IMG/VR virus record: IMGVR_UViG_3300017987_000001
Span: 124,001-188,000 of that record
DNA: 64,000 nucleotides
Strand: one strand, 5' to 3'
The notes beneath the pieces were generated by a model, which had not been told where the DNA came from, searched no databases, and saw nothing but the letters and a program-made list of their open reading frames with translations. The position numbers were made by a program, and so were the translations under genes. Below, piece by piece: positions 2,348 through 49,210 of the stretch (positions are counted from its first letter, which is position 1; each line of letters begins with the position of its first letter).

Positions 2348-2349
2348 TC

Positions 2350-11426: not shown

Positions 11427-14400
11427 TCACTTCCCGAACTGCACGGAGTCGCCCACGCGCAGTTCACCCCTCTTGTAAGCGCGCAGGACGTCGGCCTTCG
11501 ACATGAAGGTCTTCACACGCTTGTCCTTGGCCGTCGATGCGAGGTACAGCCCGTGCAGGAACTCCTGCCTTGGGAAGTAGTGCACGTCGAAGTCGGATGC
11601 CGCGAGGAGGTTCCGACTCGGCATCATCTTGTCGACCGCTTCTTCCACCGCCGCCTTGCTCACCGGCACATGGAAATTCATAGCGTCACCGTCGAAGTCG
11701 GCGTTGAATCCCGGCGTCACGATGGGCGGAATCTGCAGCGTGTTGCCCTTGGTGATGATTGGCCACGCCGCCATCATGCCGTAACGGTGAAGCACCGGCG
11801 CGCGGTTGATGATGACCGGCCGACGACCAGTCTCTTCGAGCAGCGCCTTGTACGCCACCTGATCCTGATTCTCGATCGCCTTGGCCGCAGCCATCGCGCC
11901 CATGCCGCGCCGAACGAGGTTGCGCATCACGAACGGACGGTAAAGCACCCACGCCTTGCTCTCGGGGAGGCCGACCTGATCCATGCCAAGACTGGGGTTC
12001 GGCGTGATCACGCCTCGACCAACGGTGTCGACAGCCGCCCCGAGCACCTTCTGCTGATACATGCCCAGCTTCGGGCTCGATCCGAAGATGTGGCGCAGCA
12101 AACCGCCGACCTGCTTCTCCTGCGTCTTCGCAGCGACCGGATCACCGAGACCCGTGACCGCCTTGTATGCCTTGTAGAGCCGCAGGCGCTCGTCACCAAG
12201 CTCGTCGTCGCCGAGATCGTTGCGCAGCTCGCGCAGGTCGTCGTTGACGCTCATGAGATCCGCGTAGAGGTAGTTCGGATCATCCACGAACGTCGTCTTG
12301 TTGAAGGTGGTGATCGGGCGGAAGTTCGGAGGAAGCACCGGAACCTTCGTCAGCATGAGGTCGGACGGCTTCTGTCCCGCCTGCTTCAGCGTGCGCAGGT
12401 AGCCAAGTACCTTCACGGCGTTATCGCGCTTCGCGCCGGTCGCCTCGCGCACCTGCGAGGAGTAGTGCTCGATCGCGTCGTCGACTTTGATACGCTTGAG
12501 CGCGCTCAGGATCGCCTTCGACCCGCGCTCACCGTTCAAGTCGTCGCGTCCGGCAATGATCCGCTCCAGCTTGTTCTGCGTCAGCCCGAGCATGCGGCGA
12601 ATCGGCTCTTCCATCACAGGATTCGGGATAGGCTCAGCGAGGTCGATGTGAGACCAGCGCGTGCCACCATGGCCGCCGGTGAGGCCGACATCGAAGAGGC
12701 CGCCCTTCACCGGCTCCATGGCGTCTCCCGTGACCGTGTCGTTCTTCTTGATCGGTCCGGCGGACATCTTATCGATGTCCTTATCCGTCATGGCAAACAG
12801 ATGCAGCTGCTCGCCCTTCTTCTTGAGGTTGATCCCCGACGCCTGAAGCATGCTCAGGAACTTGTCGTAGATCATCGGAACCTTCGGGCTTGCAGGCGTG
12901 TACCCGAGTCGGAGCGCACGCCAGAAGTCGTCATTGCGCTGCCCGCGCACGAGCTTGGCGTCGCGGATGACATCGGTCGCACCGTGGCTGATGAGCGCCA
13001 TCATCTCGCCGACGCCGATACGCTTCGAGCCTTCTTGGCCGCCACCTGCGGGCATGCCCTCAGCCGTGTACGAGCCGATGTCGCGGCCGGAGAGCTTCGG
13101 CTCGGCCATGTGGTGAAGCTTCATCATGTACGTGTAGCCCGTGAAGACCTTCGGGATCTTCCGACCGCTCACCGGATCATGGATATCCTCGGTGTCGCTC
13201 ATCCCGTGCTTCTGCAGTTCCTTCTTCGCGAGCGTGACATAGCTCTCGTCCATGAAGCCCGGCAGCTTGTAGGGCACGCCGGTCTTCTTCGCGATCTTGC
13301 CCAACGCGGTCTCGATGAGCTGCGCCGGGTTGATACGGCTCACGATGCCGAGCGACGACAGCGTGATGTCGAACGGCTTGCCGTCCTTGTCGTGCGGCAT
13401 CTGATCGTCGGGGATGATCTTCGAGATGACGCCCTTGCCGCCGTAGCGATTGGAGAGCTTGTCGCCGACGTGCATTGGCGAGTACGCCTTCACGATGACC
13501 TTCCAGCCCTCCTTCGTCTTGTCGACATCCGTGACCACGCCTTCCGACTCGTGATCCCACGTCTCGGACGCGTCGCTGTAGAGCGTCTTGCGTGCGCGCA
13601 GCATTCCGCCGCCAGACGGCTTACGCTTGGAGATCGACAGCACCAGCGGATCACCGAACTTCACCTTCGTGCCGATCTTCACGACGCCATTGTCATCGAT
13701 CGTCGACATCTGCTGCTTGTCAAAGGTGCCCGGATAGATCGACATATACGACTTCTTGCCTGCCTCCTGATTGTCAGACTGCTGGTACTTCGTCGTGTAC
13801 ATGTGCTCGCTGGCGAGACGCTTCGCAGCTGACTCACTGAGTACGAGCGCGTCATCGGCGTTGTACCCACGATATGGCAGGTATGCGACCTTCAGGTTCA
13901 TTCCGGAGGCCACTGCCCCTGTGTCGTCGGTGAAGTTGCTTCGAGCGAGCAGCTGACCGGGAGCGACAGGATCTCCAACTCGTACGACAGGAGTGTTGTG
14001 GAGGTAGGTCTTCCGGTTGAAGGGGAAGTTGTTATAGAGATCGTAAGAGACCTTCTCTCCGTCGGCATAGCGCACGACGACCTTATCCTTAGTGATCTCA
14101 GCAACCGACCCCATACCCTCTGCACGAACCGCACCAGCCCGATCACCATAGATCTCCTCGAAGCTGCGTCCCGAACCATCATCGGCGAGGTTCTGAACGA
14201 GCGGAGCCTCGGCATTGCGAAGCGGCAGCGCCTGCGTCGCCATCTTCGCGCCCATGAGCAGACGGCCACCCTTGATCGCACTGACCATGGGGACCATGTT
14301 CGCCGTCGCCGTGAACATGTGGCTCGTGTGCGGCAGCTCGAAGTCGACATCCTTACGCTTCACGTACGCGAGCTTCTTGCCACGGATCATCGCTCGCACT

Positions 14401-16925
14401 TCTTTGCCCTTGCGCGCAAGCTCGCCGGGGAATGCGATGATGCTCTTGGCCATCTTGCTGGCGCTGATGCGGCGCGGCTTGCCGGTCTTCGCGTCGAGCA
14501 TGTCAACGTAGATGTTCCCGTCCGAACCCTTGTACGTCCGGTGCGTGATGCGGCTGTCAACACCAATCTTCATGCCTTCGGGCGCACGAATGGGGTCGAT
14601 CACGCCGAAGTGCGACGGCTGCACGGCACGCGCTTCGTCGGGAACAGCGTCGAGACCGGGCATTCCGCCCTCACCCATGCGGGTGACGCGCACGAGCTGG
14701 TCGAAGATCTCAAGCGGGTTCACCTCTTCGAGCGGAGCTGCGAGACCGCTCTTGAGCAGCACAAGTCGAAGCTGCGGCGAGAGCGCGCCCGCCGGGAACT
14801 TCGAGACGTTGCCCTTGTTGGTAGCACGCCACAGCAGCTTACGGGACATGCCGCCAGCGTCACGGGCGATACGCTCGGCGAAGAGATCCTCGGGGCCGAA
14901 CACGCGCTGAAATGCGAGCGAGTCGCGATCGTCCGTATCCGCCTTGCGCTGGTTGATGTCGATGAGCTTCTTCGTGACTTCGGCGATCACTTCGGGCGAC
15001 AGCTTGTCGATCTTGCGGCCAAGCGTCATCTCGGTCGTGTCGGGGTCAACTTCCATCTTCTCGAAGACACCACGCATCTGAAGACCCATGTCATCATCCG
15101 CGCGCTTCTCCATCGCTGCGTCACGCCCCACGAACTGCACGAACGCGCGCTTGATCTCGTCGACCGGCAGCATGGCCTTCAGCTCTTCGAGCGTGGTGAA
15201 GCGGCGCGGAAGCGTCTTCTCCTTCTTCACGGCTTTGAGCTGCTTCTCGACCTTCGCCTGATCGGCCGCCGGGTTGCCCTTGATGTCCTGATTGGCCTGC
15301 TGCTGACGCTCGATCAGCTGCATCGGCTCTTCGTTCTCCATCATCTCTTCGGCGGGCATCGACATGTCGACAACATCGGCGAGCTTCGTCGCCATCGCGC
15401 TCTTGACGAGCGTGTCGGAGATCGCTTCCTCAATCGCGTTCGTCACGGCAAGGAACGCGTTGGCCGTCTTCTCCTCGACGCCGTCGAACAGCGCTGCGAT
15501 CTTCGAAGCGCCACGCGGCTGCTTCTTGGGCTTCACGGCGACGGTGATGTGGAACTGGAACTCCTTGCCGCTGTCATCGCCGCGCGGAAGCTCCTCGAAT
15601 CCGAGCGACTTGCGATGAGCACGCAGCTCGGGCGACTTCGCTTCGAGGAACCATACGCGATCCATCTCATCCCAGCCCTCGGGGTCGAGATCGACGATGG
15701 CGTTCTGCAAACTGAAGGGGAACTTGCGGCCATTACCGCATGCGGTCTTCCACTTCTTGCCGTACTTCCCGATCAGCTGCTTCGCTTCCCAGTTGCGCAG
15801 AACGCTGATGTGCGGGAGATCGAAGCGCGACTCGCAGTCGACGTCCTGATCCTTCAGCGCCTGATACGCAGCCTCGGGCAGTCCCTTGTGGATCTTGAGG
15901 TACGCCCACGGCTTGTCCGAATCCGAATCGTCGCATACCAGCTCGCCGACGAACTTCGCGCGGCGGCGGTTACCTTCCTCGTCCTCCTGCGCAGCCTTGG
16001 CGAACTTGAACTCGCTGCCCACCCAGAGCATGCACCAGCCGGTCGGCGCGACGAAGCCCTGCACCCGGCGGCACGCGTTGACGCCGTTGAAGTTCTTGCA
16101 GCTGGAGCACTGCTGGAAGAATCCCGACATCGTGTAGTTCACGTCGCCCTTGGAGGTCTTGCCGTAGCCGACGTGCTCCTCGGAGTAGCCAAAGAACGCT
16201 GCCTTCTCGGTAGCGTCGGTGTCCTGCTGCTCGGGAGGGGTCTCCTCGGGCTTCTTCGAAACAAGCTTGTGATACGCGCGCTGAACGGCACGCGGGTCGG
16301 ACGCAGCAACGTTCGCCTGCAGCAGGTCCGGTCCCCACGTCTCGTTGAGCTTGCGGTCGTCGTAACCCATCGAGCGAAGGATCGGATAGAGCTTGAGGTT
16401 CGCCTGCCCGACGTTCATGCGGAAGACGCCGGTCTCCGGCTCCATGTAGACCCTGAAGCTGCGCCCCGTGCCACCCTTGACGTTAAAGTGGGCCTCGATG
16501 ATGCCGTTGTCCTTAACTCGACTGTAGATGCCGGGGCGCAGCCTCATTTGGGACGCTACGGTATACTCGTTGCCGTTGAAGACGAACGTACCACGATCGG
16601 TGAGATACGGAACCTGAGCGATGAGCCGTTGGTTAGTCTTGTCGACAATCTTGCCGGATGCGTTATCGACAAGTTCCCACCGACCAGCGAGCTTCCATCC
16701 GAGCGTCTGGCCGCGCATGATCGCCCGCTTCTGCTCGGAGTTGGTGTACTGCTTCGGCTTCACGTACTTCACGTCGTTCAGCCGCAGCGTGTAGCGCTGG
16801 TTCGTCATCGGGAAGCGCTCTTCGATCGCCTTCTGCACGTTCGTGAACAGAAGCTGGCGCGTCGAGCGCACGTCGTCGAACTCACGCATCGTAGGTTCGT
16901 TGGGAGCAGCGATTACGTCGGCCAT
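11427..16925 (-). CDS. rpoBC: Multisubunit RNA polymerase: beta fused to N-terminal half of beta', with a ~370 aa internal insertion
   Basis: beta motifs GTFVFNG, HFGVIDPIRAPEG, RLLMGAKM, GYNADD, GDKLSNRYGGKG, YMMKLHH. beta' motifs VPVLPPNFRP, NRAPVLH and catalytic NADFDGD. Confidence 0.97.
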   Translation of the reverse strand: MADVIAAPNEPTMREFDDVRSTRQLLFTNVQKAIEERFPMTNQRYTLRLNDVKYVKPKQYTNSEQKRAIMRGQTLGWKLAGRWELVDNASGKIVDKTNQRLIAQVPYLTDRGTFVFNGNEYTVASQMRLRPGIYSRVKDNGIIEAHFNVKGGTGRSFRVYMEPETGVFRMNVGQANLKLYPILRSMGYDDRKLNETWGPDLLQANVAASDPRAVQRAYHKLVSKKPEETPPEQQDTDATEKAAFFGYSEEHVGYGKTSKGDVNYTMSGFFQQCSSCKNFNGVNACRRVQGFVAPTGWCMLWVGSEFKFAKAAQEDEEGNRRRAKFVGELVCDDSDSDKPWAYLKIHKGLPEAAYQALKDQDVDCESRFDLPHISVLRNWEAKQLIGKYGKKWKTACGNGRKFPFSLQNAIVDLDPEGWDEMDRVWFLEAKSPELRAHRKSLGFEELPRGDDSGKEFQFHITVAVKPKKQPRGASKIAALFDGVEEKTANAFLAVTNAIEEAISDTLVKSAMATKLADVVDMSMPAEEMMENEEPMQLIERQQQANQDIKGNPAADQAKVEKQLKAVKKEKTLPRRFTTLEELKAMLPVDEIKRAFVQFVGRDAAMEKRADDDMGLQMRGVFEKMEVDPDTTEMTLGRKIDKLSPEVIAEVTKKLIDINQRKADTDDRDSLAFQRVFGPEDLFAERIARDAGGMSRKLLWRATNKGNVSKFPAGALSPQLRLVLLKSGLAAPLEEVNPLEIFDQLVRVTRMGEGGMPGLDAVPDEARAVQPSHFGVIDPIRAPEGMKIGVDSRITHRTYKGSDGNIYVDMLDAKTGKPRRISASKMAKSIIAFPGELARKGKEVRAMIRGKKLAYVKRKDVDFELPHTSHMFTATANMVPMVSAIKGGRLLMGAKMATQALPLRNAEAPLVQNLADDGSGRSFEEIYGDRAGAVRAEGMGSVAEITKDKVVVRYADGEKVSYDLYNNFPFNRKTYLHNTPVVRVGDPVAPGQLLARSNFTDDTGAVASGMNLKVAYLPYRGYNADDALVLSESAAKRLASEHMYTTKYQQSDNQEAGKKSYMSIYPGTFDKQQMSTIDDNGVVKIGTKVKFGDPLVLSISKRKPSGGGMLRARKTLYSDASETWDHESEGVVTDVDKTKEGWKVIVKAYSPMHVGDKLSNRYGGKGVISKIIPDDQMPHDKDGKPFDITLSSLGIVSRINPAQLIETALGKIAKKTGVPYKLPGFMDESYVTLAKKELQKHGMSDTEDIHDPVSGRKIPKVFTGYTYMMKLHHMAEPKLSGRDIGSYTAEGMPAGGGQEGSKRIGVGEMMALISHGATDVIRDAKLVRGQRNDDFWRALRLGYTPASPKVPMIYDKFLSMLQASGINLKKKGEQLHLFAMTDKDIDKMSAGPIKKNDTVTGDAMEPVKGGLFDVGLTGGHGGTRWSHIDLAEPIPNPVMEEPIRRMLGLTQNKLERIIAGRDDLNGERGSKAILSALKRIKVDDAIEHYSSQVREATGAKRDNAVKVLGYLRTLKQAGQKPSDLMLTKVPVLPPNFRPITTFNKTTFVDDPNYLYADLMSVNDDLRELRNDLGDDELGDERLRLYKAYKAVTGLGDPVAAKTQEKQVGGLLRHIFGSSPKLGMYQQKVLGAAVDTVGRGVITPNPSLGMDQVGLPESKAWVLYRPFVMRNLVRRGMGAMAAAKAIENQDQVAYKALLEETGRRPVIINRAPVLHRYGMMAAWPIITKGNTLQIPPIVTPGFNADFDGDAMNFHVPVSKAAVEEAVDKMMPSRNLLAASDFDVHYFPRQEFLHGLYLASTAKDKRVKTFMSKADVLRAYKRGELRVGDSVQFGK
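15520..15960 (-). other. 2H phosphoesterase-like domain inserted in RNAP beta
   Basis: Two H-x-[ST]-hydrophobic motifs: PHISVL (H372) and FHITVAV (H459), 87 aa apart. Confidence 0.75.
16023..16146 (-). other. HiPIP-like 4-Cys (putative Fe-S) domain inserted in RNAP beta
   Basis: CSSC-x8-C-x11-WC-x2-W (..PTGWCMLW) matches the HiPIP cysteine spacing. Confidence 0.65.
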
Positions 16926-18016
16926 CAGATCGGCTCCTCCGCGATTGTCTCTTTCTCGCCCGGATCTTTACGGTACGCCACAAGCGGCGTCGGTGTGGCA
17001 AGTGCGCGCCGCTTGAGCAGCCGCTCCAGTGTCTGCGAACGCTTGCGTCCTTCGTCATGCTTCTTCGCGTAACGCCACGCGCCTGCACCGGCCGCGCCGG
17101 TCAGCATCATCAGGCTGAGCAGGTAGAGTCCGGCAATCCCGCTTCCGGCTCCGGTCCACGGCCCCGGTGTCGTAGCCTCGACCGGATCACCCCAGCCTTC
17201 GCCATTAGCCTTCTTCTGCATGATCTCGGCAATCTTCGTGAAGTTGCCGCGCGAGAAGATATCGGCGAGATGGTCGACCCGCTCGGCGAGACTCGCGACC
17301 TTCTGGCCACTGTACTCGGATTCGAGCGCTTTCTGGAACTCTTCTTCTGCCTGCGCACGCTCGCGCTCGATGCGCTTCTTGCGTAGTTCGTCGTAGTGCT
17401 TGCCCGCGAAGTGCGACGTGAGTCCAGCTGCAGTGATCGGCAAGCCGACAAGCATCGACGCGCCGAGCGGATGGGTGATCGGATTGTCGGTGGGTTGGAA
17501 GAGATTCCCGAGCGCGCCCTTGAGATCCATGCCGCCGAGCAGGTTCTTGACGTACTTGTAGATCAGCGGCGACATCAGCGCGCCGCCCGCAAGTGCGATC
17601 GGCAAGCCGTAGCCCGCTTCCTTCTCGCTCGCGGCTTTGATGGGTACTTCAAGCTCCTGCTTCGGGAGCTTCAGCTTCGCGCCCGCTCGCTCGGTATCGA
17701 GATACTCGGTCATGAGCTTCTTGCGTCGCTTCTCGGCCTTCTCGAAGCTTCGCTTCTTCAGTGCAGCCACGAGTGCAACCGCCGGTATGCCGAGCAGAGC
17801 ACCGCCGCCGACGGCCTTCAGGAAGCTGCGCCAGCCCACGGGCATTCCACCGATGTCGCCACCGAGCCCCTCGACCTCCTTCGCGAGGTCGCCGCTGGCG
17901 CTGAAGCGGTCAACAACGTCGTCGAGACTGAGTTCGGCCTCCTTCAGCATCTCATCGCTGATAGGGGCACCCTCGGTCTCGGACGCCTGCTTGATTGCGA
18001 GTGCAAGCTGTCCCAT
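16925..18016 (-). CDS. Putative virion/ejection protein with four Gly/Ala-rich hydrophobic segments
   Basis: Start at MGQLAL; hydrophobic segments alternate with basic helices; KQAS, KEAG, KVAS, KIAE, KKAN motifs. Confidence 0.7.
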   Translation of the reverse strand: MGQLALAIKQASETEGAPISDEMLKEAELSLDDVVDRFSASGDLAKEVEGLGGDIGGMPVGWRSFLKAVGGGALLGIPAVALVAALKKRSFEKAEKRRKKLMTEYLDTERAGAKLKLPKQELEVPIKAASEKEAGYGLPIALAGGALMSPLIYKYVKNLLGGMDLKGALGNLFQPTDNPITHPLGASMLVGLPITAAGLTSHFAGKHYDELRKKRIERERAQAEEEFQKALESEYSGQKVASLAERVDHLADIFSRGNFTKIAEIMQKKANGEGWGDPVEATTPGPWTGAGSGIAGLYLLSLMMLTGAAGAGAWRYAKKHDEGRKRSQTLERLLKRRALATPTPLVAYRKDPGEKETIAEEPI

Positions 18017-18017
18017 A

Positions 18018-18374
18018 TCAGAACCCTCTCTGCGGGTTGTACACATACAGATCGGCCCACCGCAGGAAGACACGCCAGTTCTTCGTCTCCGGATCGTACT
18101 CCCGGTCCTCAGCAGAGATGACTGCATGCCCGTTGGAGTACATCGTGTAGATGTCCGCCATGCGCTTGCGATCCTTCTCGTCACTCATATCGAGAATCTC
18201 GACGTGAGCACGCACGCCCTGCTTGGGCTGCATATGATCGGGATCGTCGTTCTTCAGGTCGGGCACATGGCCACGGAACGGGAGACCGTCCATGCCCGGA
18301 AGAATCGCGGGCATGTCGCGCTGCCCATTGGATGGATCGATCAGCTTGCCGTCGATATCCCAGCGATCAGCCAT
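18018..18374 (-). CDS. Hypothetical protein (118 aa)
   Basis: ORF track; tightly packed in the operon. Confidence 0.7.
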   Translation of the reverse strand: MADRWDIDGKLIDPSNGQRDMPAILPGMDGLPFRGHVPDLKNDDPDHMQPKQGVRAHVEILDMSDEKDRKRMADIYTMYSNGHAVISAEDREYDPETKNWRVFLRWADLYVYNPQRGF

Positions 18375-19831
18375 CAGATCTCCACCCCTCCTGCGGTCAT
18401 CGGAAGAATCTTGTTGTGCGCGTCGTCGGGCTGCGTCTCACCCTCTGCCTCGCGCTCCTGCGGCTGATTCTTCTTCGCACGGCGTTCAGCCTGCCGCGTG
18501 AGCCGCTTGTAGAGCGCCATGCGCTCAACGTGCCGCAGCTCTTCCGGATCAAGCGTAGGCTCCCGAGAGAGCGAGTATGCGGCGGTCGAAGCACCGGCAC
18601 CTAGGAGCGGAATGCCTGCAGTGGGGATGAGAAACGTGAGTATGGCGAGGTTCTTCGCCAATCCCCCTCCCTGCCGGATGATCTCCGCGAGTGCACTCGT
18701 TTGCGCCGCCTTCTCCAGCGCGCCATCGAGTTCGCTCGGCCGGATACCCGCCTCGGCGAACTTCTCGTAGAAGCCGTACTTGAACGCATTCTTCTTCAGC
18801 TTCTCGACGTCACGATCCTTGCGCTCCTTGTTCTCCGTGTGCTTCTTCGTTCCTTCGCCGACCGCCTCGATCTTCCCCTCGTCGACAGCGTCTTCCATAC
18901 CCTTTTCGAGATCGTCGAGTCGCGGCTCGTAGTAATCGTCTCCCTCTGTGAGGTGATCTTTCGCAATCTCCTGTGCCACTGCCGGATTGCTCGTGTGCTC
19001 AAGCTCTACTTCGGTGCCCTTCTCGATCTGAGCCTTCGGGAACATCGACGTGGGCATACCGGCGGCGAGTCCGCCGGGAATCACGTCGTCCTTGCCACCA
19101 ACGAGCTTGGCGAGGAGGCGATAGATCTCCTCCTCCGCCTCATGCTCGTCGACGCCGAGTGACTCTGCTTGCTGGTGGAAGCCCTCGTCGTCGATACCCT
19201 GTCCCATCTGCGTGATGTAGTTCACGAGCTGCTGTAGGATCTCGGGCGGCAGCGACTCTTCAGCCTCGTGCTCGGGCGATTCGATCTCGCCTTCCTCGTG
19301 CTCTTCGCTTTCATCCCCGTTGGCACTCTTCACGACGTACTCGACGAAGCTCTGCATCTTCGGCATGCCGCTGATGCCCTGCAGCGCCTGTGCGAGCGAC
19401 GGAGCTGGCTGCGACGGCCCATTGAGGCCAAGCAGATTGCTGGGCGCTTCGGGCGTGCCGGGAGCGGCCGGTCCCATAGCCGACGGGTTGCCGCCCTCTT
19501 CGACGACCTTCTCCTCAGGCGTGCGGTGAAGCCCGGGGTAGCGCAGCTCTTCGATCATGCGCCGCCGACGATCGGCCTTCTCGGCCTCGTTCTTCTGAGC
19601 AATAGCCTGCAGAAGCGGAGCTTTCTCCATAACCGTGCGGAAGTCCTGCCCCTTCAGCGCTTCGAGCGCGTCGATGCCGATGCCCTTCTGATCGAGCTTC
19701 CTCATGCGCTCGGTCATCGTAGGCGTGGGCATGCCGCTCATCGGCTGGACGCCGGGTAGCCCCGGCATACCTGCGCCGATGTTCGCCTGCTTGAGGTGAT
19801 TTTTGAACGCGTCCAACAATCTCTGGGGCAT
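18374..19831 (-). CDS. Acidic putative virion protein with DUF5661-like segment and C-terminal TM
   Basis: KGTEVELEHTSNPAVAQEIAKDHLTEGDDYY resembles DUF5661; KQAN, KSAN, KNAF, KAAQ motifs. Confidence 0.7.
   Translation of the reverse strand: MPQRLLDAFKNHLKQANIGAGMPGLPGVQPMSGMPTPTMTERMRKLDQKGIGIDALEALKGQDFRTVMEKAPLLQAIAQKNEAEKADRRRRMIEELRYPGLHRTPEEKVVEEGGNPSAMGPAAPGTPEAPSNLLGLNGPSQPAPSLAQALQGISGMPKMQSFVEYVVKSANGDESEEHEEGEIESPEHEAEESLPPEILQQLVNYITQMGQGIDDEGFHQQAESLGVDEHEAEEEIYRLLAKLVGGKDDVIPGGLAAGMPTSMFPKAQIEKGTEVELEHTSNPAVAQEIAKDHLTEGDDYYEPRLDDLEKGMEDAVDEGKIEAVGEGTKKHTENKERKDRDVEKLKKNAFKYGFYEKFAEAGIRPSELDGALEKAAQTSALAEIIRQGGGLAKNLAILTFLIPTAGIPLLGAGASTAAYSLSREPTLDPEELRHVERMALYKRLTRQAERRAKKNQPQEREAEGETQPDDAHNKILPMTAGGVEI
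19799..19820. promoter_or_regulatory. 22 bp palindrome copy 2 (ATTTTTGAACGCGTCCAACAAT)
   Basis: Consensus match; intragenic. Confidence 0.7.
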
Positions 19832-19842
19832 GGGGCTGCTCC

Positions 19843-21816
19843 CTATCGCATGAATGGGCTACCGGGGGACTGCGCTGCGGGCGCTCCCCGGAAGTAGCCC
19901 ATGATACTCGAAATCGTGTCGAGAATGTTGCCCGTATCTCGGATTGACTGCGGCTTCGTGCCGAGCAGCATACTCAGCAGATTCTCTCTGAGACCGAACG
20001 GCTTCGCGGGCGCCGGGCCGCCCATCCAATGCGGCTTCGCCGGAGAGCCGCCGCCCATCCACGCAGGCTTCTGTGGTCCGCCACCGCCGAGCAGCCCACC
20101 AAGGAACGCCTGCTTCAGCAGCCCAGCCGATTCGTGGACCTTGTCCCAATCGACCGAAGCTGCATGCTCGAAAATGGATTGTAGTATCGTGATCTTCCCG
20201 GTCTTGGGGTTCATGTAGATGTCCCCAGCCTCTGGGTTCTCTGGGTCAAGCGGTCCCAATCGAATCGAATCTTCTTCATCGTCATCAAAGCGATGCGCTC
20301 CTGCATCGACTGCGCGTTGATCTTCTTTCCACTGCTCTTCATCCTCGTCGGGTTCCTTCTTAGAGAATGGCCAGAGCGCTTCCTTCAACAGGATGCCTGC
20401 GTAGTCGGATGCTTTCCTCATGTCTGGATAGTCCTCGTGAATGGAGATCAGTCCGGGCGCGCGGTACGCCCCACTCGGGAACTGACCCTGTGCCTTGATC
20501 CGAGCAATCCGACCAAGGAACTCCTCCGGGTTCTTCAGCATTGCCCGCCGAAGATCCTCGGAGAATCCCGTTCCTACTTTACCAACTGCGGGGCCGTCAG
20601 GCGAGAGCGAATACTCGAAGCCGCCCGCTCCGACGCCCTCCAACCGCTTCTCGCCGGGGAAGATGTCCTTCACGAACACGTCGTGCTCGTCGTACAGCTT
20701 GACCTTCGCGGGCTTGCCGCCCTTCTTCGGCCACGCTACAATGCCCTCATGAGTAAGCGGATCACGCCCACCCTTGACATCCTCCCACAGAGCACGCTGT
20801 TCTTCCGGGGTCTCGGCCATTCGTGGGAGATGGAACTTGCCTTCAGGCAGATGCTTGAGGATTTCGCGGACCTTATCAAGGCGCTCGGCAATCGGGACGT
20901 CCATGCCGATGGGCTTCTTGCCGTACTTCAGGATATTGAAGATTGCATTGCGGAGCTGAACGCCCTGCTCGCGCTGCTTCTTCAGCGATTTGCGCGTCGA
21001 GGAGTTAAGAATCCCACCCAGTTCTTGGGGAGGGATGGCACGATCATCACGCGTACCGTAGAGTTCCCCACGGAGAATTGATCCCACGAGATGCTTGGGG
21101 ATGTTGAGGCCAGTAGTTCCTCCAACTCGGTAGGTGTGGACAATAGGTCGGCCAGTCGTTGTCGGCCGGTATGAGAGAACATCGATCTTATCCGAGAATA
21201 GCTTGTAGAGGGCTGCTGCTCCATCGATCTTCTCCATGTGGAGGTACTTCTCGTCGAAGAGCTTCTCCACGTCCTCGGCCGGAACCTTGGCGTACCGAAC
21301 CTTCTTGTGCTTGATGACCTCCGTGGGCGTCGTGTTGATCATCAGCCACGAGCCGCCCTGCGTCTTCTTCGTACGCGGCGAGCCGCCGGTGGGCGGTCCG
21401 CTCTTGCGTATCATCGTGTACATCTCTGGGTGCTTCTTGTGCGTGACCACGAAGTTGATCTTGTTCGGCTCGACCTTCGTGACCAGCACCGTGCCTTTGT
21501 CGTGCGTCTTCACCAGCCCCTTGCCGTAGCCCGACGTTATTTCGCCCTCGAAATTCGCGTAGGCTCCGGTGTGAAGCGGTTGTTGGAATGCTAAAACTTT
21601 CTGCCCCGACTCCTCGGGGAGTTTGCGTGATGCCCAACTGAGAAGTGATGGCTTGCCGCCTAGGTTTGGTCCGAACCGAATATCGTAGTGCGGCCCAGCT
21701 CGGTCAGCTAGGTGGCGCTGGATCACATACAGAAGCTCACGGCCCTTCGGGAGATCCGTAACGCTCCCGAAGCGCCGTGGGTCTGGTAGGCCCGGCGCGA
21801 ACTCAGTCTTGGCCAC
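19843..21816 (-). CDS. LigD-type 3'-phosphoesterase domain fused to ATP-dependent DNA ligase, plus KxA-bounded tail
   Basis: PE motifs IQRH...HYDIRF, H..YANFEG...GYGKG. Ligase motifs EKIDG, GELY, EGIV, KVK and OB-fold GKVGTGF. Confidence 0.88.
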   Translation of the reverse strand: MAKTEFAPGLPDPRRFGSVTDLPKGRELLYVIQRHLADRAGPHYDIRFGPNLGGKPSLLSWASRKLPEESGQKVLAFQQPLHTGAYANFEGEITSGYGKGLVKTHDKGTVLVTKVEPNKINFVVTHKKHPEMYTMIRKSGPPTGGSPRTKKTQGGSWLMINTTPTEVIKHKKVRYAKVPAEDVEKLFDEKYLHMEKIDGAAALYKLFSDKIDVLSYRPTTTGRPIVHTYRVGGTTGLNIPKHLVGSILRGELYGTRDDRAIPPQELGGILNSSTRKSLKKQREQGVQLRNAIFNILKYGKKPIGMDVPIAERLDKVREILKHLPEGKFHLPRMAETPEEQRALWEDVKGGRDPLTHEGIVAWPKKGGKPAKVKLYDEHDVFVKDIFPGEKRLEGVGAGGFEYSLSPDGPAVGKVGTGFSEDLRRAMLKNPEEFLGRIARIKAQGQFPSGAYRAPGLISIHEDYPDMRKASDYAGILLKEALWPFSKKEPDEDEEQWKEDQRAVDAGAHRFDDDEEDSIRLGPLDPENPEAGDIYMNPKTGKITILQSIFEHAASVDWDKVHESAGLLKQAFLGGLLGGGGPQKPAWMGGGSPAKPHWMGGPAPAKPFGLRENLLSMLLGTKPQSIRDTGNILDTISSIMGYFRGAPAAQSPGSPFMR

Positions 21817-21842
21817 TGCAGGCTCCTGTCAAAGCCCGTGCA

Positions 21843-22412
21843 TTATAGACGAGTGCCGCGAATCAGGCAATATACATCGCGGTTCTTGTCGACGTGGTCG
21901 ATGTCGCTCCAGATGGGGTTGCCTATCCCGAGATCGGACAGGAATGACTCCTCTCGGGCCACGGACTCCTTGTTCATCGTGACGATCGTACCTCCGACAG
22001 CCGTCACGCGCGCCAGCTCTCGTGAGACGGTCTCCCGGTCCTTCGCCGCATTGATGCTCTGCATCGTCATGATGTCGACCACGAGATCGAACGTGCCGTC
22101 GTCGAAGGGCAGCTGGAATGTGTTCAGCGTGACGGGCGTCACGGTCTTGCGGTTGTTGGCCGCTCTGCCCACCCAATCGCCGAAGAGATCCGCTGCCCAC
22201 ACGTGCCCGCACTTCGATGCGATCTGCTGCGTGAACCGCCCGTAGCCACAACCGAAGTCGAGACCGTGCGTGTAGAAGCCCGTGAGCACCTTCGTCAGCT
22301 CGGCCCCAATGATGGTGCCCTGCCGCACGTGATCCTCACCCACGTGGCCCACGCACTTGTCGCCGAAGCGCTTCTTGCGATCGGTCCAGTATTTCAGCGT
22401 GTCGGAGAACAT
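21843..22412 (-). CDS. Class I SAM-dependent methyltransferase
   Basis: GLDFGCGYG motif I; FDLVV motif. Confidence 0.85.
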   Translation of the reverse strand: MFSDTLKYWTDRKKRFGDKCVGHVGEDHVRQGTIIGAELTKVLTGFYTHGLDFGCGYGRFTQQIASKCGHVWAADLFGDWVGRAANNRKTVTPVTLNTFQLPFDDGTFDLVVDIMTMQSINAAKDRETVSRELARVTAVGGTIVTMNKESVAREESFLSDLGIGNPIWSDIDHVDKNRDVYCLIRGTRL

Positions 22413-22413
22413 G

Positions 22414-23343
22414 TTAGTCCTCGGAGATCGTAGGATATACGTACCACTGAATGGTCTTGTGCAGCCCTTCGAGCAACTTCATCTTCGGCTCGAACTTGAG
22501 TGCTTCGCGCATCTTCGTCACGTCGAGCACCTTGCGCGCCGCGCCGTTGGGCTTCTCCGTATCCCAGACGACCTCGCCCTTGTATCCGGTCAGCTTGACG
22601 ATCTTCTCCGTCAGTTCCTTGACCGTCGTGCCGATACCGGTGCCGATGTTGATCGTACCCATCGCCAGCTTCTCGTAGGCGAGGAAGATGGCATCGGCAG
22701 CGTCGTCGACGTACATGAACTCACGGATCGGGCTTCCATCTCCCCAGCACTTCACACTGGGCTTGTCCTCCTGTACGGCTTCAATGAAGCGCGCGATGAG
22801 CGCACCGACGACATGCGAGCGGTAGATCGTGAAGTCGTCGTGCGGGCCGTAGAGATTCGTGAGGATGGCCTGCCCGCCCATGATGCCGTGCTGCTTGCGA
22901 TACTGCCGCTGGCAGACCAGATGGATGCGCTTGGTCATGCCATAACCCTCGACGGACTCATGGCACGGCCCAGCTTCGAGATTCTCCTCGACGAGGTCTT
23001 CCCCCACGTCGCCCGGGTAGGCGCACGCTGAGCCGACAGAGAAGACCTTCTTGATCTTCATGCGCGCGGCAGCCTCCCACACGTTCAGCGCCATGATCGA
23101 GTTGATGTGGAACATATCGGCAGGCTGGTACATGTTGATGCCGATGCCGCCGTAATAGGCTGCCGAGTGAAGGATACCGTCGACGTGCTCGTGCCGCTGC
23201 AGGTAGCGGCAGACACTGTTGAGGTCCATCAGATCCATCTCGGTCGAACGCGGCGCAAGAACCTCGATGTGCTTCTCCTGTCTGAAGCGACGCACGAGCT
23301 TCTGTCCCAGAAAGCCTGACCCGCCAGTGATCAGAATAACCAT
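22414..23343 (-). CDS. fcl: GDP-L-fucose synthase-like epimerase/reductase (extended SDR)
   Basis: TGGSGFLG, SACAYP, YGMTK, NLYGPHD, WGDGSPIREFMYVDD, KPNGAARKVLD. Confidence 0.85.
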   Translation of the reverse strand: MVILITGGSGFLGQKLVRRFRQEKHIEVLAPRSTEMDLMDLNSVCRYLQRHEHVDGILHSAAYYGGIGINMYQPADMFHINSIMALNVWEAAARMKIKKVFSVGSACAYPGDVGEDLVEENLEAGPCHESVEGYGMTKRIHLVCQRQYRKQHGIMGGQAILTNLYGPHDDFTIYRSHVVGALIARFIEAVQEDKPSVKCWGDGSPIREFMYVDDAADAIFLAYEKLAMGTINIGTGIGTTVKELTEKIVKLTGYKGEVVWDTEKPNGAARKVLDVTKMREALKFEPKMKLLEGLHKTIQWYVYPTISED

Positions 23344-23987
23344 CAGTTCCTCCTCGTGAAGATCGCATCACCCCAGAAGTCGGGGGTCGACCCCGGCTGG
23401 AAGTGACGCAGTGTGAATCCCTGCTCGTTCATGTACTTCTCGATCTCGGGCAGCAGCTTCGTGCCTTTGTACAGCGGCTTGAGCCACGCCTCACAGATGA
23501 CCAGCTTGCAGTTCTCCAGCGTCTTGAGCGCTCCAAGCAGCACCTCGTAGTCGTGTCCCTGCACGTCCGTGACCATGACGTCGATAGGCGGCAAATTCAG
23601 CATGTCGATCGCCACTACTGCCACAGGGATCGTCGTATGGGTGCGTATCGACCGAAATCGCTTCTTCGCTATGTCCTTGTCCAGCGGGTGAAGCGACGAG
23701 CATTCGAGCGGGACCGTCGAGTACCACGGCCGAACGCCTGCCCGATCCGACACGATCTTCTGCAGGCATACGACATCCGGGTACTTCTCGCCGATCACCT
23801 CGGCGTTCGACGAGTCGCCCTCGACGCACACGATCTTCGCGTTCCACTGACGGTACGCTTCGATCTCCTGCCCGATACCAGCGCCTACGTGAAGAATCGT
23901 AGGTTCGTCTTCCGGCTGGATCTCTGCCAGCCGCATCCCGATGTCGATCAACGCTGGCACAACTTCCCTTCGATCAGATAGTGCCAT
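23343..23987 (-). CDS. FkbM-family methyltransferase
   Basis: LHVGAGIG, VCVEG, DVMVTDVQGHDYEVLLG, WGDAIF; start uncertain. Confidence 0.85.
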   Translation of the reverse strand: MALSDRREVVPALIDIGMRLAEIQPEDEPTILHVGAGIGQEIEAYRQWNAKIVCVEGDSSNAEVIGEKYPDVVCLQKIVSDRAGVRPWYSTVPLECSSLHPLDKDIAKKRFRSIRTHTTIPVAVVAIDMLNLPPIDVMVTDVQGHDYEVLLGALKTLENCKLVICEAWLKPLYKGTKLLPEIEKYMNEQGFTLRHFQPGSTPDFWGDAIFTRRN

Positions 23988-24736
23988 CCGAAGAGCCTTT
24001 CGAGTGCACGGAACAGGTGATGAGGCATCCACCGCCATGGCAATGCCTGCCTGTACTCGTGCCGGACGTACTCCGGGATGCTCCACGAGAAGATATGTTC
24101 CTTGCGTGCGCTCGTCAGCTCGAAGTGCGGTTCGAGCAGCTTGCGTACCCCGCGCTTCGTGTAGGTGTACGCTACAGGAACGCCGGGCTGGGCCTCGCAC
24201 GTTACGCTGCTGATGAGCATCTGCAGCGACTTGATCGAGTACTTGGCGTACAGCATGAGCTTCAGCACGGTGTCAGGACCGGCGAAGTTCGCCAGCTCCT
24301 GCATCGCACGATCCGGACTCGGCGTGTGGTGAATCACTCCGAACGAGTAGATGAGATCGTACGGATACGGATCGACGGTCCGGCTCAGCTCCTCGCAGTT
24401 CGCCTGCTTGAGCACCACACGATCCTCAAGACCGTACGCCTTCACGCGCTTCTCGGTGAGTTTCAGGCTCTCCGTGGAGAGATCGACGGCAGTCACGTAT
24501 GCACCGGCTCGCGCGAAGCTGACGGTGTCAGTGCCAATGCCGCAGCCGATCTCCAGTACGTAGCGATCCTTCCATCTCGGGAATTCGGCGAACGTGGGAA
24601 TGTGCGGCTCGACGAAGTACTTGCGCTTCTCGACCTGATCGAAGTACTCACGCGTCCCGACGGGGGCCGTGCCGTGTCGGATGTTGCACGGGCGCGCGTC
24701 CCAGAACTTCTGGACCTCCTCGATGGTTGCGGTCAT
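23948..24736 (-). CDS. Class I SAM-dependent methyltransferase
   Basis: Start MTATIEE (ATGA overlap); VLEIGCGIGTD, YDLIYSFGVIHH. Confidence 0.88.
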   Translation of the reverse strand: MTATIEEVQKFWDARPCNIRHGTAPVGTREYFDQVEKRKYFVEPHIPTFAEFPRWKDRYVLEIGCGIGTDTVSFARAGAYVTAVDLSTESLKLTEKRVKAYGLEDRVVLKQANCEELSRTVDPYPYDLIYSFGVIHHTPSPDRAMQELANFAGPDTVLKLMLYAKYSIKSLQMLISSVTCEAQPGVPVAYTYTKRGVRKLLEPHFELTSARKEHIFSWSIPEYVRHEYRQALPWRWMPHHLFRALERLFGWHYLIEGKLCQR

Positions 24737-26419: not shown

Positions 26420-26422
26420 GAC

Positions 26423-32297: not shown

Positions 32298-32298
32298 G

Positions 32299-49135: not shown

Positions 49136-49210
49136 TGGAACGTCCGGCGGGGGTCGAACCCGCATCTTGCGCCTTTAGAGAGCGCCGCACTCCCATTGTG
49201 CTACGGACGT
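49136..49210 (-). tRNA. tRNA with CUA anticodon (amber suppressor), CCA encoded
   Basis: Manual cloverleaf: ACGTCCG/CGGACGT acceptor, GCAC/GTGC D arm, GCGCT-CTCTAAA-GGCGC anticodon arm, GCGGG-TTCGACC-CCCGC T arm, U73, CCA; 75 nt. Confidence 0.93.

What the first reader, a model, noticed from the sequence alone, without database searches (positions are those of the whole stretch)
19843..21816. LigD-style end-healing phosphoesterase-ligase in the virion module with a KxA tail
Seen: a PE domain, an ATP-dependent ligase core and OB fold, then KEAL, an acidic segment, KQAF and a Gly/Pro tail. There is no polymerase domain and no Ku gene in the window. Ligase motif IIIa reads FNIL instead of FDIL. 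Established: LigD PE converts 3'-phosphate ends to ligatable 3'-OH. Inference: a packaged repair enzyme that seals or circularises the incoming genome, or reverses nuclease-based defence.
Basis: partly seen in the sequence, partly recalled or inferred. Interest (0 to 1): 0.6.

Follow-up and report, generated by a model that had tools for sequence, protein, structure and literature searches.

The report
Jumbo-phage end-healing DNA ligase
A 208-kb marine/sediment phage encodes a genuine two-in-one enzyme that cleans damaged DNA 3' ends and seals the break; its non-catalytic tail carries the short K-x-A motif that marks this phage's capsid proteins for trimming, so it may travel inside the virus particle, though that is not proven.

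Summary
Window 19843-21816 (-) is a real 657-aa gene: a LigD-type 3'-phosphoesterase (PE), a minimal ATP-dependent DNA ligase (NTase + OB) and a 190-aa mostly disordered tail. All catalytic residues are invariant in 107 homologs. "FNIL" is an ordinary variant (D 65, N 31, G 10). It is the only polynucleotide ligase found in a complete 207.9-kb DTR phage genome, which has no Ku, LigD polymerase, kinase or RNA ligase. It marks an uncultivated clade: at least 498 proteins and 47 IMG/VR contigs, with no isolate relative.

New findings:
- The family reads K-x-D-G-[A/S]-[A/S] in motif I and H-E-D-Y in motif VI.
- A K-x-A motif follows the core in 47 of 71 homologs (about 2.4 expected).
- Tails of close relatives are a fused neighbouring Gly-rich gene and end in a conserved C-terminal helical element.
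- K-x-A is enriched and positionally conserved in head-module proteins of two phages, including the MCP N-terminus.
- K-x-A is invariant in the linker of a gp21/assemblin-fold protease.

The "packaged" idea therefore has circumstantial support only, about 0.45. The gene lies upstream of the single RNAP and the head genes, not among identified structural genes.

The parts
21823..21827 (-). Ribosome-binding site AGGAG, 7 nt upstream of the GTG start (21816)
   Evidence: Sequence read directly. The gap to the upstream gene is 26 nt, and no terminator lies nearby on this strand.
21325..21759 (-). LigD-type 3'-phosphoesterase (PE) domain, residues about 20-164. Catalytic residues are H35, H43, D45, R47, H82 and Y86.
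   Evidence: Pfam LigD_N, 39.9 bits against a 31.1 cut-off. PDB 3p43 E 6e-11. VIA Z 16.6, 36% identity. The five His/Asp/Arg residues are 100% conserved and Y86 is conserved in 104 of 107 homologs.
20692..21324 (-). Ligase nucleotidyltransferase domain, residues about 165-375. Motif I K196-I-D-G-A-A, Ia S215-Y-R217, III E251, IIIa F293 (FNIL), IV E357-G358, V K371/K373.
   Evidence: PHROG_114 E 2e-15. Invariant columns. Fold Z 21-22 to archaeal and LigD ligases.
20425..20691 (-). OB domain with a variant motif VI (R452-A-P ... H460-E-D-Y463), residues about 376-464
   Evidence: AF2 pLDDT above 90. Aligned to ligase OB domains through residue about 465. H460 is conserved in 105 of 107, D462 in 104 of 107 and Y463 in 96 of 107 homologs.
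20374..20424 (-). Flexible core/tail linker, residues 465-481. It carries the family boundary motif (here P-D-M-R-K-A-S, 464-471) and LLKEAL (476-481).
   Evidence: pLDDT below 50 at residues 463-470. K-x-A lies within 8 aa after HEDY in 47 of 71 homologs, against about 2.4 expected. Boundary sites resemble head-protein K-x-A sites.
20182..20373 (-). Acidic, low-confidence insert specific to this protein, residues about 482-545
   Evidence: Absent from the closest relatives P0002 and P0028; replaced by a Cys-rich insert in P0005. Low pLDDT.
20101..20163 (-). Conserved pre-terminal motif, residues 552-572, including SAGLLKQAF (K568-Q-A570)
   Evidence: Aligns with the '...DLVKAA...' motif of 28 clade members. 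The K568 site is at the 84th percentile on the head-site PWM.
19999..20100 (-). Gly/Pro-rich segment with two W-M-G-G repeats, residues 573-606
   Evidence: Read directly. Disordered in the model.
19885..19998 (-). Conserved C-terminal helical element (CTE), residues 607-644: helix 609-618, turn, helix 622-644
   Evidence: pLDDT 66-86. A profile hits the extreme C-terminus of 28 close relatives (E 1e-14 to 5e-31) and no other ORF of G000, G001 or the 47 loci.
21843..22412 (-). Small SAM-dependent methyltransferase immediately upstream (189 aa)
   Evidence: Pfam Methyltransf_11/25. The same arrangement occurs in relatives with about 50% identical ligases.
18374..19831 (-). p485, the downstream neighbour (11-nt gap). 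It has an N-terminal '...HLKQA|NIG', an acidic region, a DUF5661 segment (residues 249-312 = window 18896-19087) and a C-terminal hydrophobic helix.
   Evidence: DUF5661 E 1.6e-5. The same segment is fused to the ligase C-terminus in P0100 and P0116 at 45-61% identity.
16925..18016 (-). p363, a Gly-rich hydrophobic protein beginning 'MGQLALAIKQA|SETEG'. Its stop overlaps the RNAP start.
   Evidence: Gene call. Sequence. K-x-A 8 observed against 3.7 expected.
11427..16925 (-). The single phage RNAP large subunit (beta fused to the N-terminal part of beta'), 1832 aa, with an inserted 2H phosphoesterase domain (residues about 336-468 = window 15522-15920)
   Evidence: Pfam Rpb2_6 E 1e-60 and Rpb1_2. 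It is the only copy in the genome. The 2H insert is homologous to the N-terminal extension of ligase homologs P0109 and P0115, and both H-x-[ST] motifs are present.

Best explanation
The gene encodes an active, two-module DNA end-healing and sealing enzyme. The N-terminal LigD-type phosphoesterase removes a 3'-phosphate, or trims 3'-ribonucleotides, to leave a 3'-OH. The minimal ATP-dependent ligase (Lys196 adenylate, NTase + OB) then seals the 3'-OH/5'-phosphate nick. There is no Ku, no LigD polymerase and no 5' kinase, so it repairs nicks or cohesive breaks in phage DNA and does not perform NHEJ. It is the phage's only ligase. The 190-aa tail is not catalytic. It is the reduced remnant of a neighbouring Gly-rich gene that is fused to the ligase in close relatives. 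It starts in a flexible linker carrying a [K/R]-x-A|S motif and ends in a conserved helical hairpin. K-x-A is most probably the cleavage motif of this clade's gp21/assemblin-fold prohead protease. I therefore infer that the tail is a targeting and processing appendage: the precursor enters the prohead, is trimmed after the core, and the ligase is delivered with the genome, probably together with the single phage RNAP. Shown: domain identity, intact motifs, uniqueness in the genome, tail architecture and the K-x-A statistics. Inferred: enzymatic activities, cleavage at K-x-A and packaging.
For: Enzyme: PE and ligase identified by sequence and fold. All catalytic residues are invariant in 107 homologs. 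No other ligase, Ku, POL, kinase, Rnl2-type RNA ligase or RtcB in the complete genome.

Tail: the core ends at HEDY, and K-x-A follows within 8 aa in 47 of 71 homologs against 2.4 expected. The linker is disordered. The CTE is conserved at the extreme C-terminus in 28 relatives whose inserts differ. The inserts are homologous to a free-standing 253-aa gene that lies between ligase and RNAP in G001. The DUF5661 segment of neighbour p485 is fused to the ligase in P0100 and P0116.

K-x-A as a head-processing motif:
- It is specifically enriched (z 5.1; controls -0.9 to 1.7) and localised to 110-140 kb.
- The same holds in an independent relative, at its MCP-containing 140-160 kb.
- Sites are positionally conserved at 43% against 20-27% for five control patterns (two small-sample controls, K.L and K.G, reached 37-41%) and 12% for K.A outside the block.
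- In the MCP, a divergent N-terminal peptide is followed by an in-register K-x-A and then conserved sequence.
- The head module encodes a protease whose best structural match among 48,161 chains is T4 gp21 (Z 9.4), followed by herpesvirus assemblins. It has an invariant K237-V-A239 in the disordered linker right after the protease domain.
- Ligase-boundary sites score like head sites (p about 1e-5), whereas core K-x-A sites do not.

Context: the order ligase - RNAP - head genes is conserved. RNAP lies within 10 kb of the ligase in 22 of 47 loci, in several arrangements. Fusion partners in the family (SNF2, GNAT, NUDIX, HD, 2H, InPase, Zn-peptidase) are the domain vocabulary of injected polyvalent proteins (PMC5512222). 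Precedent for a 3-residue protease motif, short propeptides and packaged RNAP in SPN3US: PMC10052503.
Against: There is no direct evidence of virion location: no cultured relative, no RNA runs and no proteome. In P0001 itself the boundary reads R-K-A-S rather than K-x-A, KEAL scores poorly (13th percentile), and K-x-A is not enriched in this protein. About half of the family are bare cores, some ending exactly at HEDY, so the core function does not need a tail. The conserved Lys after HEDY could instead replace the missing motif VI lysine. As the sole ligase, it may simply serve replication. The homologs are not phylogenetically independent, so the motif p-values are optimistic. The immediate neighbours (Gly-rich proteins, RNAP) are not proven virion proteins. 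The CTE was found on no other protein, which is not what a shared targeting signal predicts. Motif I lacks the canonical Arg and motif VI reads HEDY, so the chemistry or cofactor may deviate from standard ligases.
Confidence: 0.45

Rival explanations
1. Purely intracellular replication and repair ligase. The PE-ligase seals Okazaki fragments and repairs nicks with blocked 3' ends in replicating phage DNA. The tail is a docking or regulatory appendage (to the replisome, RNAP or membrane), or evolutionary debris from a gene fusion. The K-x-A after the core is structural or catalytic, for example a displaced motif VI lysine, and is not a cleavage site.
For: It is the only ligase in a complete genome. 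Many relatives are bare cores. The tail of P0001 is a reduced remnant, largely disordered. The gene is not adjacent to identified structural genes. Phage ATP-dependent ligases are normally replication enzymes (PMC7824862). The motif VI lysine is missing (Y463), and a conserved Lys follows 3-4 residues later.
Against: The gene is 38-45 kb from the UvsX-like and DNA polymerase genes and sits instead in the RNAP/head-proximal block, a placement conserved in relatives. Some cores end at HEDY with no Lys. The boundary sites resemble head-protein sites and lie in a disordered linker. Tails are fusions with block genes that themselves start with K-x-A peptides. A PIP-box-like reading of the C-terminus is not conserved.
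Confidence: 0.4
2. RNA or RNA-DNA junction repair tied to the phage RNAP. The PE, together with the 2H phosphoesterase carried by the RNAP (or fused to the ligase in relatives), heals 2',3'-cyclic or 3'-phosphate ends. The ligase then seals RNA-terminated nicks, for example transcripts used as primers or RNA cut by host ribonucleases.
For: RNAP-ligase linkage occurs in 22 of 47 loci in several arrangements. The 2H domain is exchanged between RNAP and ligase. Relatives are fused to 2H-SAK, a LigT-like 2H domain, HD and RNA_ligase domains. Motif I K-x-D-G-[A/S]-[A/S] lacks the Arg typical of DNA ligases. It is established that LigD PE resects 3'-ribonucleotides (PMC3258152, PMC3082917), and from my own knowledge LigD ligase prefers a 3'-ribonucleotide at the nick.
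Against: The fold and the OB/motif VI region are DNA-ligase-like (Z 21-22), with no RNA ligase or capping enzyme in the top 50. No 5' kinase is present, although one is needed for ribonuclease-cut RNA. The PE-LIG region is collinear with LigD.
Confidence: 0.1
3. Not a ligase in function: either an mRNA capping-type nucleotidyltransferase working with the adjacent methyltransferase and RNAP, or a catalytically dead structural protein.
For: The arrangement MTase - phosphoesterase/NTase - RNAP recalls capping systems. Motifs I and VI are atypical.
Against: All nucleotidyl-transfer residues are invariant under long divergence. Sequence profiles hit DNA ligase families only. No capping enzyme appears among the top structural matches. 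The small MTase was detected upstream in only 4 of 47 loci by BLAST.
Confidence: 0.04

Closest known systems
Bacterial DNA ligase D (LigD; P. aeruginosa, M. tuberculosis, Agrobacterium)
   Same: The PE domain has the same catalytic His/His/Asp/Arg/His/Tyr set. It is directly followed by a minimal NTase + OB ligase and is collinear with the LigD-type model PRK09632. The fold gives Z 21 to the Mtb LigD LIG domain.
   Different: No POL (AEP) domain and no Ku anywhere in the genome. Motif I lacks the Arg and motif VI reads HEDY, not RxDK. It has a C-terminal tail with K-x-A motifs and a terminal helix. It is phage-restricted: only 3 MAG contigs among about 185,000 species genomes.
Stand-alone archaeal PE enzymes (PDB 3p43 and 3p4h; archaeal members of the LigD 3'-phosphoesterase superfamily)
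   Same: They are the closest PE sequences and structures: 35-36% identity, rmsd about 2 A, Z 16-16.6. Their 3'-phosphatase and 3'-ribonucleoside-resecting activities are established (PMC3082917, PMC3258152).
   Different: Those are single-domain proteins. Here the PE is covalently coupled to a ligase in a virus.
Phage ATP-dependent DNA ligases (T4 Dnl, T7 gp1.3, PHROG_114; Chlorella virus and Lig E minimal ligases)
   Same: Covalent nucleotidyltransferase core with motifs I-V and an OB domain. T4 ligase is the top Foldseek hit.
   Different: None of those carries a PE domain. Only weak tblastn hits to ligase parts occur in 4 of 50,697 phage records. The motif I and VI signature differs.
Capsid-targeted, protease-processed internal and ejection proteins (T4 IPs and Alt; phiKZ/SPN3US ejection proteins and vRNAP)
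   Same: A short 3-residue motif recurs in head proteins and at domain boundaries. There are short terminal propeptides, and enzymes are delivered with the DNA (PMC10052503; PMC5512222). Here K-x-A behaves the same way statistically.
   Different: The motif is K-x-A, not (L/I)-x-E or (A/S/G)-x-E. The putative signal is C-terminal. No packaged DNA ligase appeared among the packaged proteins in the papers I read. Packaging here is inferred, not shown.
Polyvalent proteins of phages and conjugative elements (Iyer et al. 2017)
   Same: Family members fuse the core to SNF2 helicase, GNAT, NUDIX, HD, 2H, InPase and Zn-peptidase (HExxH) domains, at either end and with rapid turnover.
   Different: LigD PE and DNA ligase are not among the domains described there. 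No MuF or portal fusion was seen. P0001 itself has only the two catalytic domains.

Membership tests
LigD 3'-phosphoesterase (PE, Pfam PF13298) | Profile match above the curated threshold over the whole domain | tested here: met
   39.9 bits against 31.1, profile positions 1-107 of 107; TIGR02777 E 6e-11
LigD 3'-phosphoesterase (PE, Pfam PF13298) | Catalytic His, His, Asp, Arg, His, Tyr constellation | tested here: met
   H35, H43, D45, R47 and H82 are 100% conserved and Y86 is conserved in 104 of 107 homologs; they align to the PE structures
LigD 3'-phosphoesterase (PE, Pfam PF13298) | PE beta-barrel fold | tested here: met
   VIA Z 16.6, rmsd 2.0 A, 119 of 124 residues of 3p43
LigD 3'-phosphoesterase (PE, Pfam PF13298) | Mn-dependent 3'-phosphomonoesterase and phosphodiesterase activity | not testable with these tools
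   Needs a biochemical assay
ATP-dependent DNA ligase (covalent nucleotidyltransferase superfamily) | Motif I lysine and motifs III, IIIa, IV and V | tested here: met
   K196, D198, G199, E251, F293, E357, G358, K371 and K373 are invariant or nearly so
ATP-dependent DNA ligase (covalent nucleotidyltransferase superfamily) | NTase + C-terminal OB fold | tested here: met
   Z 21-22 over model residues 166-468 to archaeal and LigD ligases; Foldseek E down to 8e-14
ATP-dependent DNA ligase (covalent nucleotidyltransferase superfamily) | Canonical K-x-D-G-x-R (motif I) and R-x-D-K (motif VI) | tested here: not met
   Position I+5 is A or S, never R. Motif VI reads H-E-D-Y (H in 105 and Y in 96 of 107); only the Asp is kept.
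ATP-dependent DNA ligase (covalent nucleotidyltransferase superfamily) | Self-adenylylation and nick sealing | not testable with these tools
   Needs a biochemical assay
Bacterial LigD / NHEJ system | AEP primase-polymerase (POL) domain | tested here: not met
   Absent from the protein. PF21686 is absent from the complete genome.
Bacterial LigD / NHEJ system | Ku partner | tested here: not met
   PF02735 has no match at E <= 1 in the complete genome
Capsid-packaged, protease-processed phage proteins | Carries the clade's maturation-cleavage motif at a flexible domain boundary | tested here: inconclusive
   The boundary motif is conserved (47 of 71), resembles head-protein sites and sits in a linker with pLDDT below 50. 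Cleavage itself is not shown, and P0001 reads R-K-A-S.
Capsid-packaged, protease-processed phage proteins | A maturation protease exists in the genome | tested here: met
   The 489-aa protein at G000 112118-113587 has T4 gp21 as top match among 48,161 chains (Z 9.4), then herpesvirus assemblins. H117 and S168 are invariant.
Capsid-packaged, protease-processed phage proteins | Physical presence in virions | not testable with these tools
   No isolate or proteome exists
Polyvalent proteins (Iyer et al. 2017) | Many unrelated effector domains in one polypeptide, linked to MuF, portal or virion genes | tested here: not met
   P0001 has only PE + ligase. Relatives add one or two domains. No MuF or portal fusion was seen. 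Ligase and PE are not listed in the paper.
mRNA capping enzyme (GTP-RNA guanylyltransferase) | Capping-enzyme profile or fold closer than DNA ligases | tested here: not met
   No capping family was hit, and none appears in the top 50 structural matches

The most novel reading that the evidence does not exclude
A DNA end-healing ligase that is loaded into the prohead through a C-terminal appendage and cut free after a K-x-A site by a gp21/assemblin-fold protease. It is then injected with the genome and the phage's single RNAP, ready to repair nicked or 3'-blocked incoming DNA before any phage gene is expressed. In relatives the same ligase core is made as a polyprotein with membrane-active Gly-rich, metallopeptidase or other effector modules, each delimited by K-x-A sites. 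K-x-A would then be a readable code for predicting the packaged proteome of an entire uncultivated jumbo-phage clade.
Probability: 0.35. Interest if true: 0.75.

Novelty: new variant of a known kind. Interest (0 to 1): 0.6.

Why it matters
LigD-type end healing is known as part of bacterial NHEJ with Ku. Here the PE-ligase pair has been taken up without Ku or polymerase as the sole ligase and a hallmark gene of a widespread, uncultivated clade of 160-226-kb phages. It carries its own motif I and VI signature. That gives a compact natural heal-and-seal enzyme worth testing biochemically and as a reagent.

If the K-x-A reading is right, it also gives a simple rule for recognising protease-processed, packaged proteins in these phages. 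It would be, to my knowledge, the first case of a DNA repair ligase delivered inside a virion. That bears on how large phages protect incoming DNA from host nucleases.

Tried and rejected
1. FNIL as a defect: rejected. The position is D, N or G in the family.
2. K-x-A enrichment within P0001: not present, 4 observed against 4.0 expected.
3. PIP-box or clamp-binding reading of the C-terminal I-x-x-Y-F: rejected. Y-F is not conserved among the 28 CTEs.
4. CTE as a signal shared by several proteins: not found in any other ORF of G000, G001 or the 47 loci. A word-based database search of residues 546-657 returned only the query and missed known positives, so it is uninformative.
5. Homology of the Gly-rich inserts of relatives to other G000 proteins: none.
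6. Phage promoter motifs by intergenic k-mer enrichment: only tRNA T-loops and a collagen-like repeat ORF turned up. The sigma-70-like site upstream of the ligase is not above shuffles, and there are no terminators.
7. Second (virion versus non-virion) RNAP set: absent.
8. Capping-enzyme or RNA-ligase identity: not supported by profiles or folds.
9. Read-through of the ligase's TAG stop by the CUA tRNA: adds only 34 residues with no detectable meaning and is not in frame with p485.
10. Pfam and PHROG annotation of most neighbouring and head genes: no hits.
11. Expression data: only DNA runs hold the locus.
13. No claim here rests on absence from that library.
Full report
**What is there.**

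The ORF at window 19843..21816 (minus strand) is real: GTG start preceded by AGGAG, 657 aa, TAG stop. The window is bases 124001-188000 of a complete 207,857-bp viral contig with direct terminal repeats. The contig is found in sediment and seawater metagenomes.

- **PE domain.** Residues about 20-164 are a LigD-type 3'-phosphoesterase. Pfam LigD_N covers its full profile at 39.9 bits against a 31.1 cut-off. Archaeal PE structures match at E 6e-11. The AF2 model superposes on 3p43 at Z 16.6, rmsd 2.0 A, 36% identity.
- **Ligase.** Residues about 165-464 are a minimal ATP-dependent DNA ligase (NTase + OB). PHROG_114 matches at E 2e-15. A LigD-type NCBIfam model is collinear over residues 25-421. 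Foldseek E-values reach 8e-14 to T4, archaeal, LigD and Lig E ligases. VIA-align gives Z 21-22, including 260 of 303 residues of the Mtb LigD ligase domain. No capping enzyme or RNA ligase is among the top 50.
- **Tail.** Residues 465-657 are mostly low-confidence, except a terminal helix-turn-helix at 609-644.

**Is it active?**

In 107 aligned homologs the PE residues H35, H43, D45, R47 and H82 are invariant, and Y86 is kept in 104. The ligase residues K196, D198, G199, S215, R217, E251, E357, G358, K371 and K373 are invariant.

Two family-wide departures from canonical ligases are real. Motif I is K-x-D-G-[A/S]-[A/S], never the usual Arg. Motif VI reads H-E-D-Y in place of R-x-D-K. Strong purifying selection argues for catalysis, but the cofactor or step-1 chemistry may differ.

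**Genomic inventory.**

The complete genome has no Ku, no LigD polymerase, no other ATP- or NAD-dependent DNA ligase, no Rnl2-type RNA ligase, no RtcB and no AAA_33-type kinase. This is therefore the only detectable polynucleotide ligase. It can only act on breaks that already have a 5'-phosphate. It works like the PE + LIG modules of LigD, but it is not an NHEJ LigD.

**Family.**

- At least 498 homologs exist in metagenomes.
- 47 IMG/VR contigs, many of 155-226 kb, carry full-length copies down to about 30% identity.
- Isolate phage records give only weak ligase-part hits in 4 of 50,697 records.
- Only 3 MAG contigs among about 185,000 species genomes carry it.
- The core (about 1-465) is often a stand-alone protein. 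Other members carry SNF2 helicase, GNAT, HD, NUDIX, SET, 2H, RNA-ligase, InPase, Zn-peptidase, DUF5661 or intein insertions at either end.
- The papers I read on jumbo-phage genomics and on polyvalent proteins do not describe a PE-ligase.

**The tail.**

Homology to relatives stops at the motif H-E-D-Y. Right after it the family consensus is P-x-K-x-A-[A/S]. K-x-A lies within 8 residues in 47 of 71 homologs, against about 2.4 expected and a maximum of 8 in 200 random trials. P0001 has P-D-M-R-K-A-S there, in a segment with pLDDT below 50.

In the 28 closest relatives (core identity above 60%) the architecture has five parts in order:

1. Core.
2. A K-x-A motif.
3. A hypervariable insert of 0-500 aa.
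4. Two further phi-phi-K-x-A motifs.
5. A conserved about 45-aa helical element (CTE) at the extreme C-terminus.

The inserts are Gly/Ala-rich and hydrophobic. They share a D-P-E-Y-Q-x-G motif and sometimes carry an HExxH signature. They are homologous to a free-standing 253-aa gene that lies between ligase and RNAP in a relative. P0001 has lost most of this. It keeps LLKEAL, a private acidic insert, the conserved SAGLLKQAF motif, a Gly/Pro stretch and the CTE. The DUF5661 segment of the adjacent gene p485 is fused to the ligase in P0100 and P0116.

**K-x-A beyond the ligase.**

- In the phage proteome K-x-A is specifically over-represented (z 5.1; A.K 1.6, K..A -0.9, R.A 0.2). The excess lies at 110-140 kb.
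- That region holds the MCP (Atlas scores 0.98-0.99), an acidic scaffold-like protein and a portal-sized protein.
- It also holds a 489-aa protein whose N-terminal domain has T4 prohead protease gp21 as best match among 48,161 chains (Z 9.4, 128 of 165 residues), followed by herpesvirus assemblins.
- In that protease family K237-V-A239 is invariant. It lies in a disordered linker at the end of the protease domain.
- An independent complete relative (G001, 211 kb; MCP 78% and ligase 54% identical) shows the same specific enrichment, localised to its MCP region.
- K-x-A sites in the head/RNAP block are conserved in register at 43%. Five control patterns give 20-27%, two small-sample controls (K.L and K.G) reach 37-41%, and K-x-A outside the block gives 12%.
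- Both MCPs have a divergent N-terminal peptide, then K-x-A in register, then highly conserved sequence.
- A weight matrix from conserved head sites scores the ligase-boundary sites well above background (p about 1e-5), but not K-x-A sites inside the core. In P0001 the K568 site is at the 84th percentile and the K478 site at the 13th.
- The two genes downstream of the ligase begin with short peptides ending in K-Q-A.
- Precedent for a three-residue protease motif, short propeptides and packaged RNAP comes from SPN3US. That herpesvirus assemblins cleave after Ala is my own knowledge, not tested here.

**Context.**

The ligase has 26-nt and 11-nt gaps to its neighbours and no terminator nearby. 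The order small MTase - ligase - Gly-rich genes - RNAP (beta fused to beta' N-terminal part) - beta' C-terminal part - portal-sized gene - protease - scaffold-like - MCP is the same in G000 and G001. RNAP lies within 10 kb of the ligase in 22 of 47 loci, in several arrangements. The genome has a single, rather cellular-like RNAP. That RNAP carries an inserted 2H phosphoesterase domain, which in P0109 and P0115 is instead fused to the ligase. Tail genes lie at 50-105 kb. The UvsX-like and DNA polymerase genes lie 38-45 kb on the other side.

**Interpretation.**

The enzyme identity is secure, about 0.8 that it heals and seals DNA. The location is not. The boundary motif, the fused block genes, the conserved terminal element, the protease and the gene order together make a prohead-targeted, trimmed and injected ligase a serious possibility. 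I put that at about 0.45 and an ordinary intracellular replication or repair ligase at about 0.40. An RNA-junction role linked to RNAP and 2H is about 0.10, and other readings about 0.05.

Weaknesses: the homologs are not independent, P0001's own sites are imperfect, bare cores exist, and no proteome, isolate or RNA data are available.

Noticed in passing
window 49136-49210 (-): A well-folded tRNA with a CUA anticodon (amber-suppressor type; ARAGORN calls it tRNA-Pyl) stands alone, far from the other 37 tRNA genes clustered at the genome ends. TAG is nevertheless the commonest stop codon (89 of 231 ORFs) and is the ligase's own stop. Large genes are intact under table 11, so there is no global recoding. 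Possibly it drives stage-specific read-through.
   Followed up: partly
window 15522-15920 (-), inside the RNAP gene 11427-16925: The beta/beta' fusion RNAP carries an inserted 2H phosphoesterase domain with both H-x-[ST] motifs (HISV, HITV). In relatives the homologous domain (Pfam 2H-SAK) is fused to the N-terminus of the PE-ligase instead.
   Followed up: partly
window 3628-5490 and 11427-16925 (-): The genome has only one multisubunit RNAP. It is strongly cellular-like (Rpb2_6 E 1e-60). Beta is fused to the N-terminal part of beta', and the rest of beta' is a separate gene 6 kb away. The orthologue in G001 is 2358 aa, and the gene call for that phage lists intein domains.
   Followed up: partly
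G000 108-125 kb (window -16 kb to +0.9 kb; the portal-sized gene reaches window 1-897): Head module: MCP (108756-109703), acidic scaffold-like protein (110698-112074), gp21/assemblin-fold protease with a helical C-terminal half (112118-113587), a 389-aa K-x-A-rich protein and a 780-aa portal-sized protein. K-x-A is enriched and conserved here and looks like the maturation cleavage motif.
   Followed up: yes
G000 113.6-126.5 kb and window 1457-2449, 16925-18016, 18374-19831: At least eight proteins have Gly-rich hydrophobic (Gly-zipper-like) segments, many starting with a short peptide ending in phi-K-x-A. They are possible internal or ejection proteins. No family assignment was obtained.
   Followed up: partly
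window 21843-32396 (-): Directly upstream of the ligase lies a 10-kb cluster of sugar-nucleotide and transferase genes: two epimerase/dehydratases, UDP-glucose dehydrogenase, five or six methyltransferases and a sulfotransferase-like gene. This suggests glycan synthesis or a modification pathway of unknown target.
   Followed up: no
window 33903-36677 (-): A 924-aa protein with a weak intein-splicing signal and no other annotation. It is syntenic with the ligase in 10 of 47 related loci.
   Followed up: no
relatives P0006, P0008, P0009, P0010 (tails) and P0005 (tail): Some ligase tails contain an HExxH metallopeptidase signature (A-H-E-L-G-H-A-T-G) embedded in hydrophobic Gly/Ala-rich sequence. 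P0005 carries a Cys-rich C-x-x-C-x-x-C-C type insert where P0001 has its acidic segment.
   Followed up: no
G000 104963-106415 (outside the window): A collagen-like G-x-y tandem-repeat coding region next to the tailspike-like gene. It produced spurious 'intergenic' repeat words in my promoter search.
   Followed up: partly
window 21842-21870 (-): A sigma-70-like site TTGCCT-17-TATAAT (10 of 12) overlaps the stop of the methyltransferase, 26 nt before the ligase start. The count of such sites in the region is not above shuffles.
   Followed up: partly
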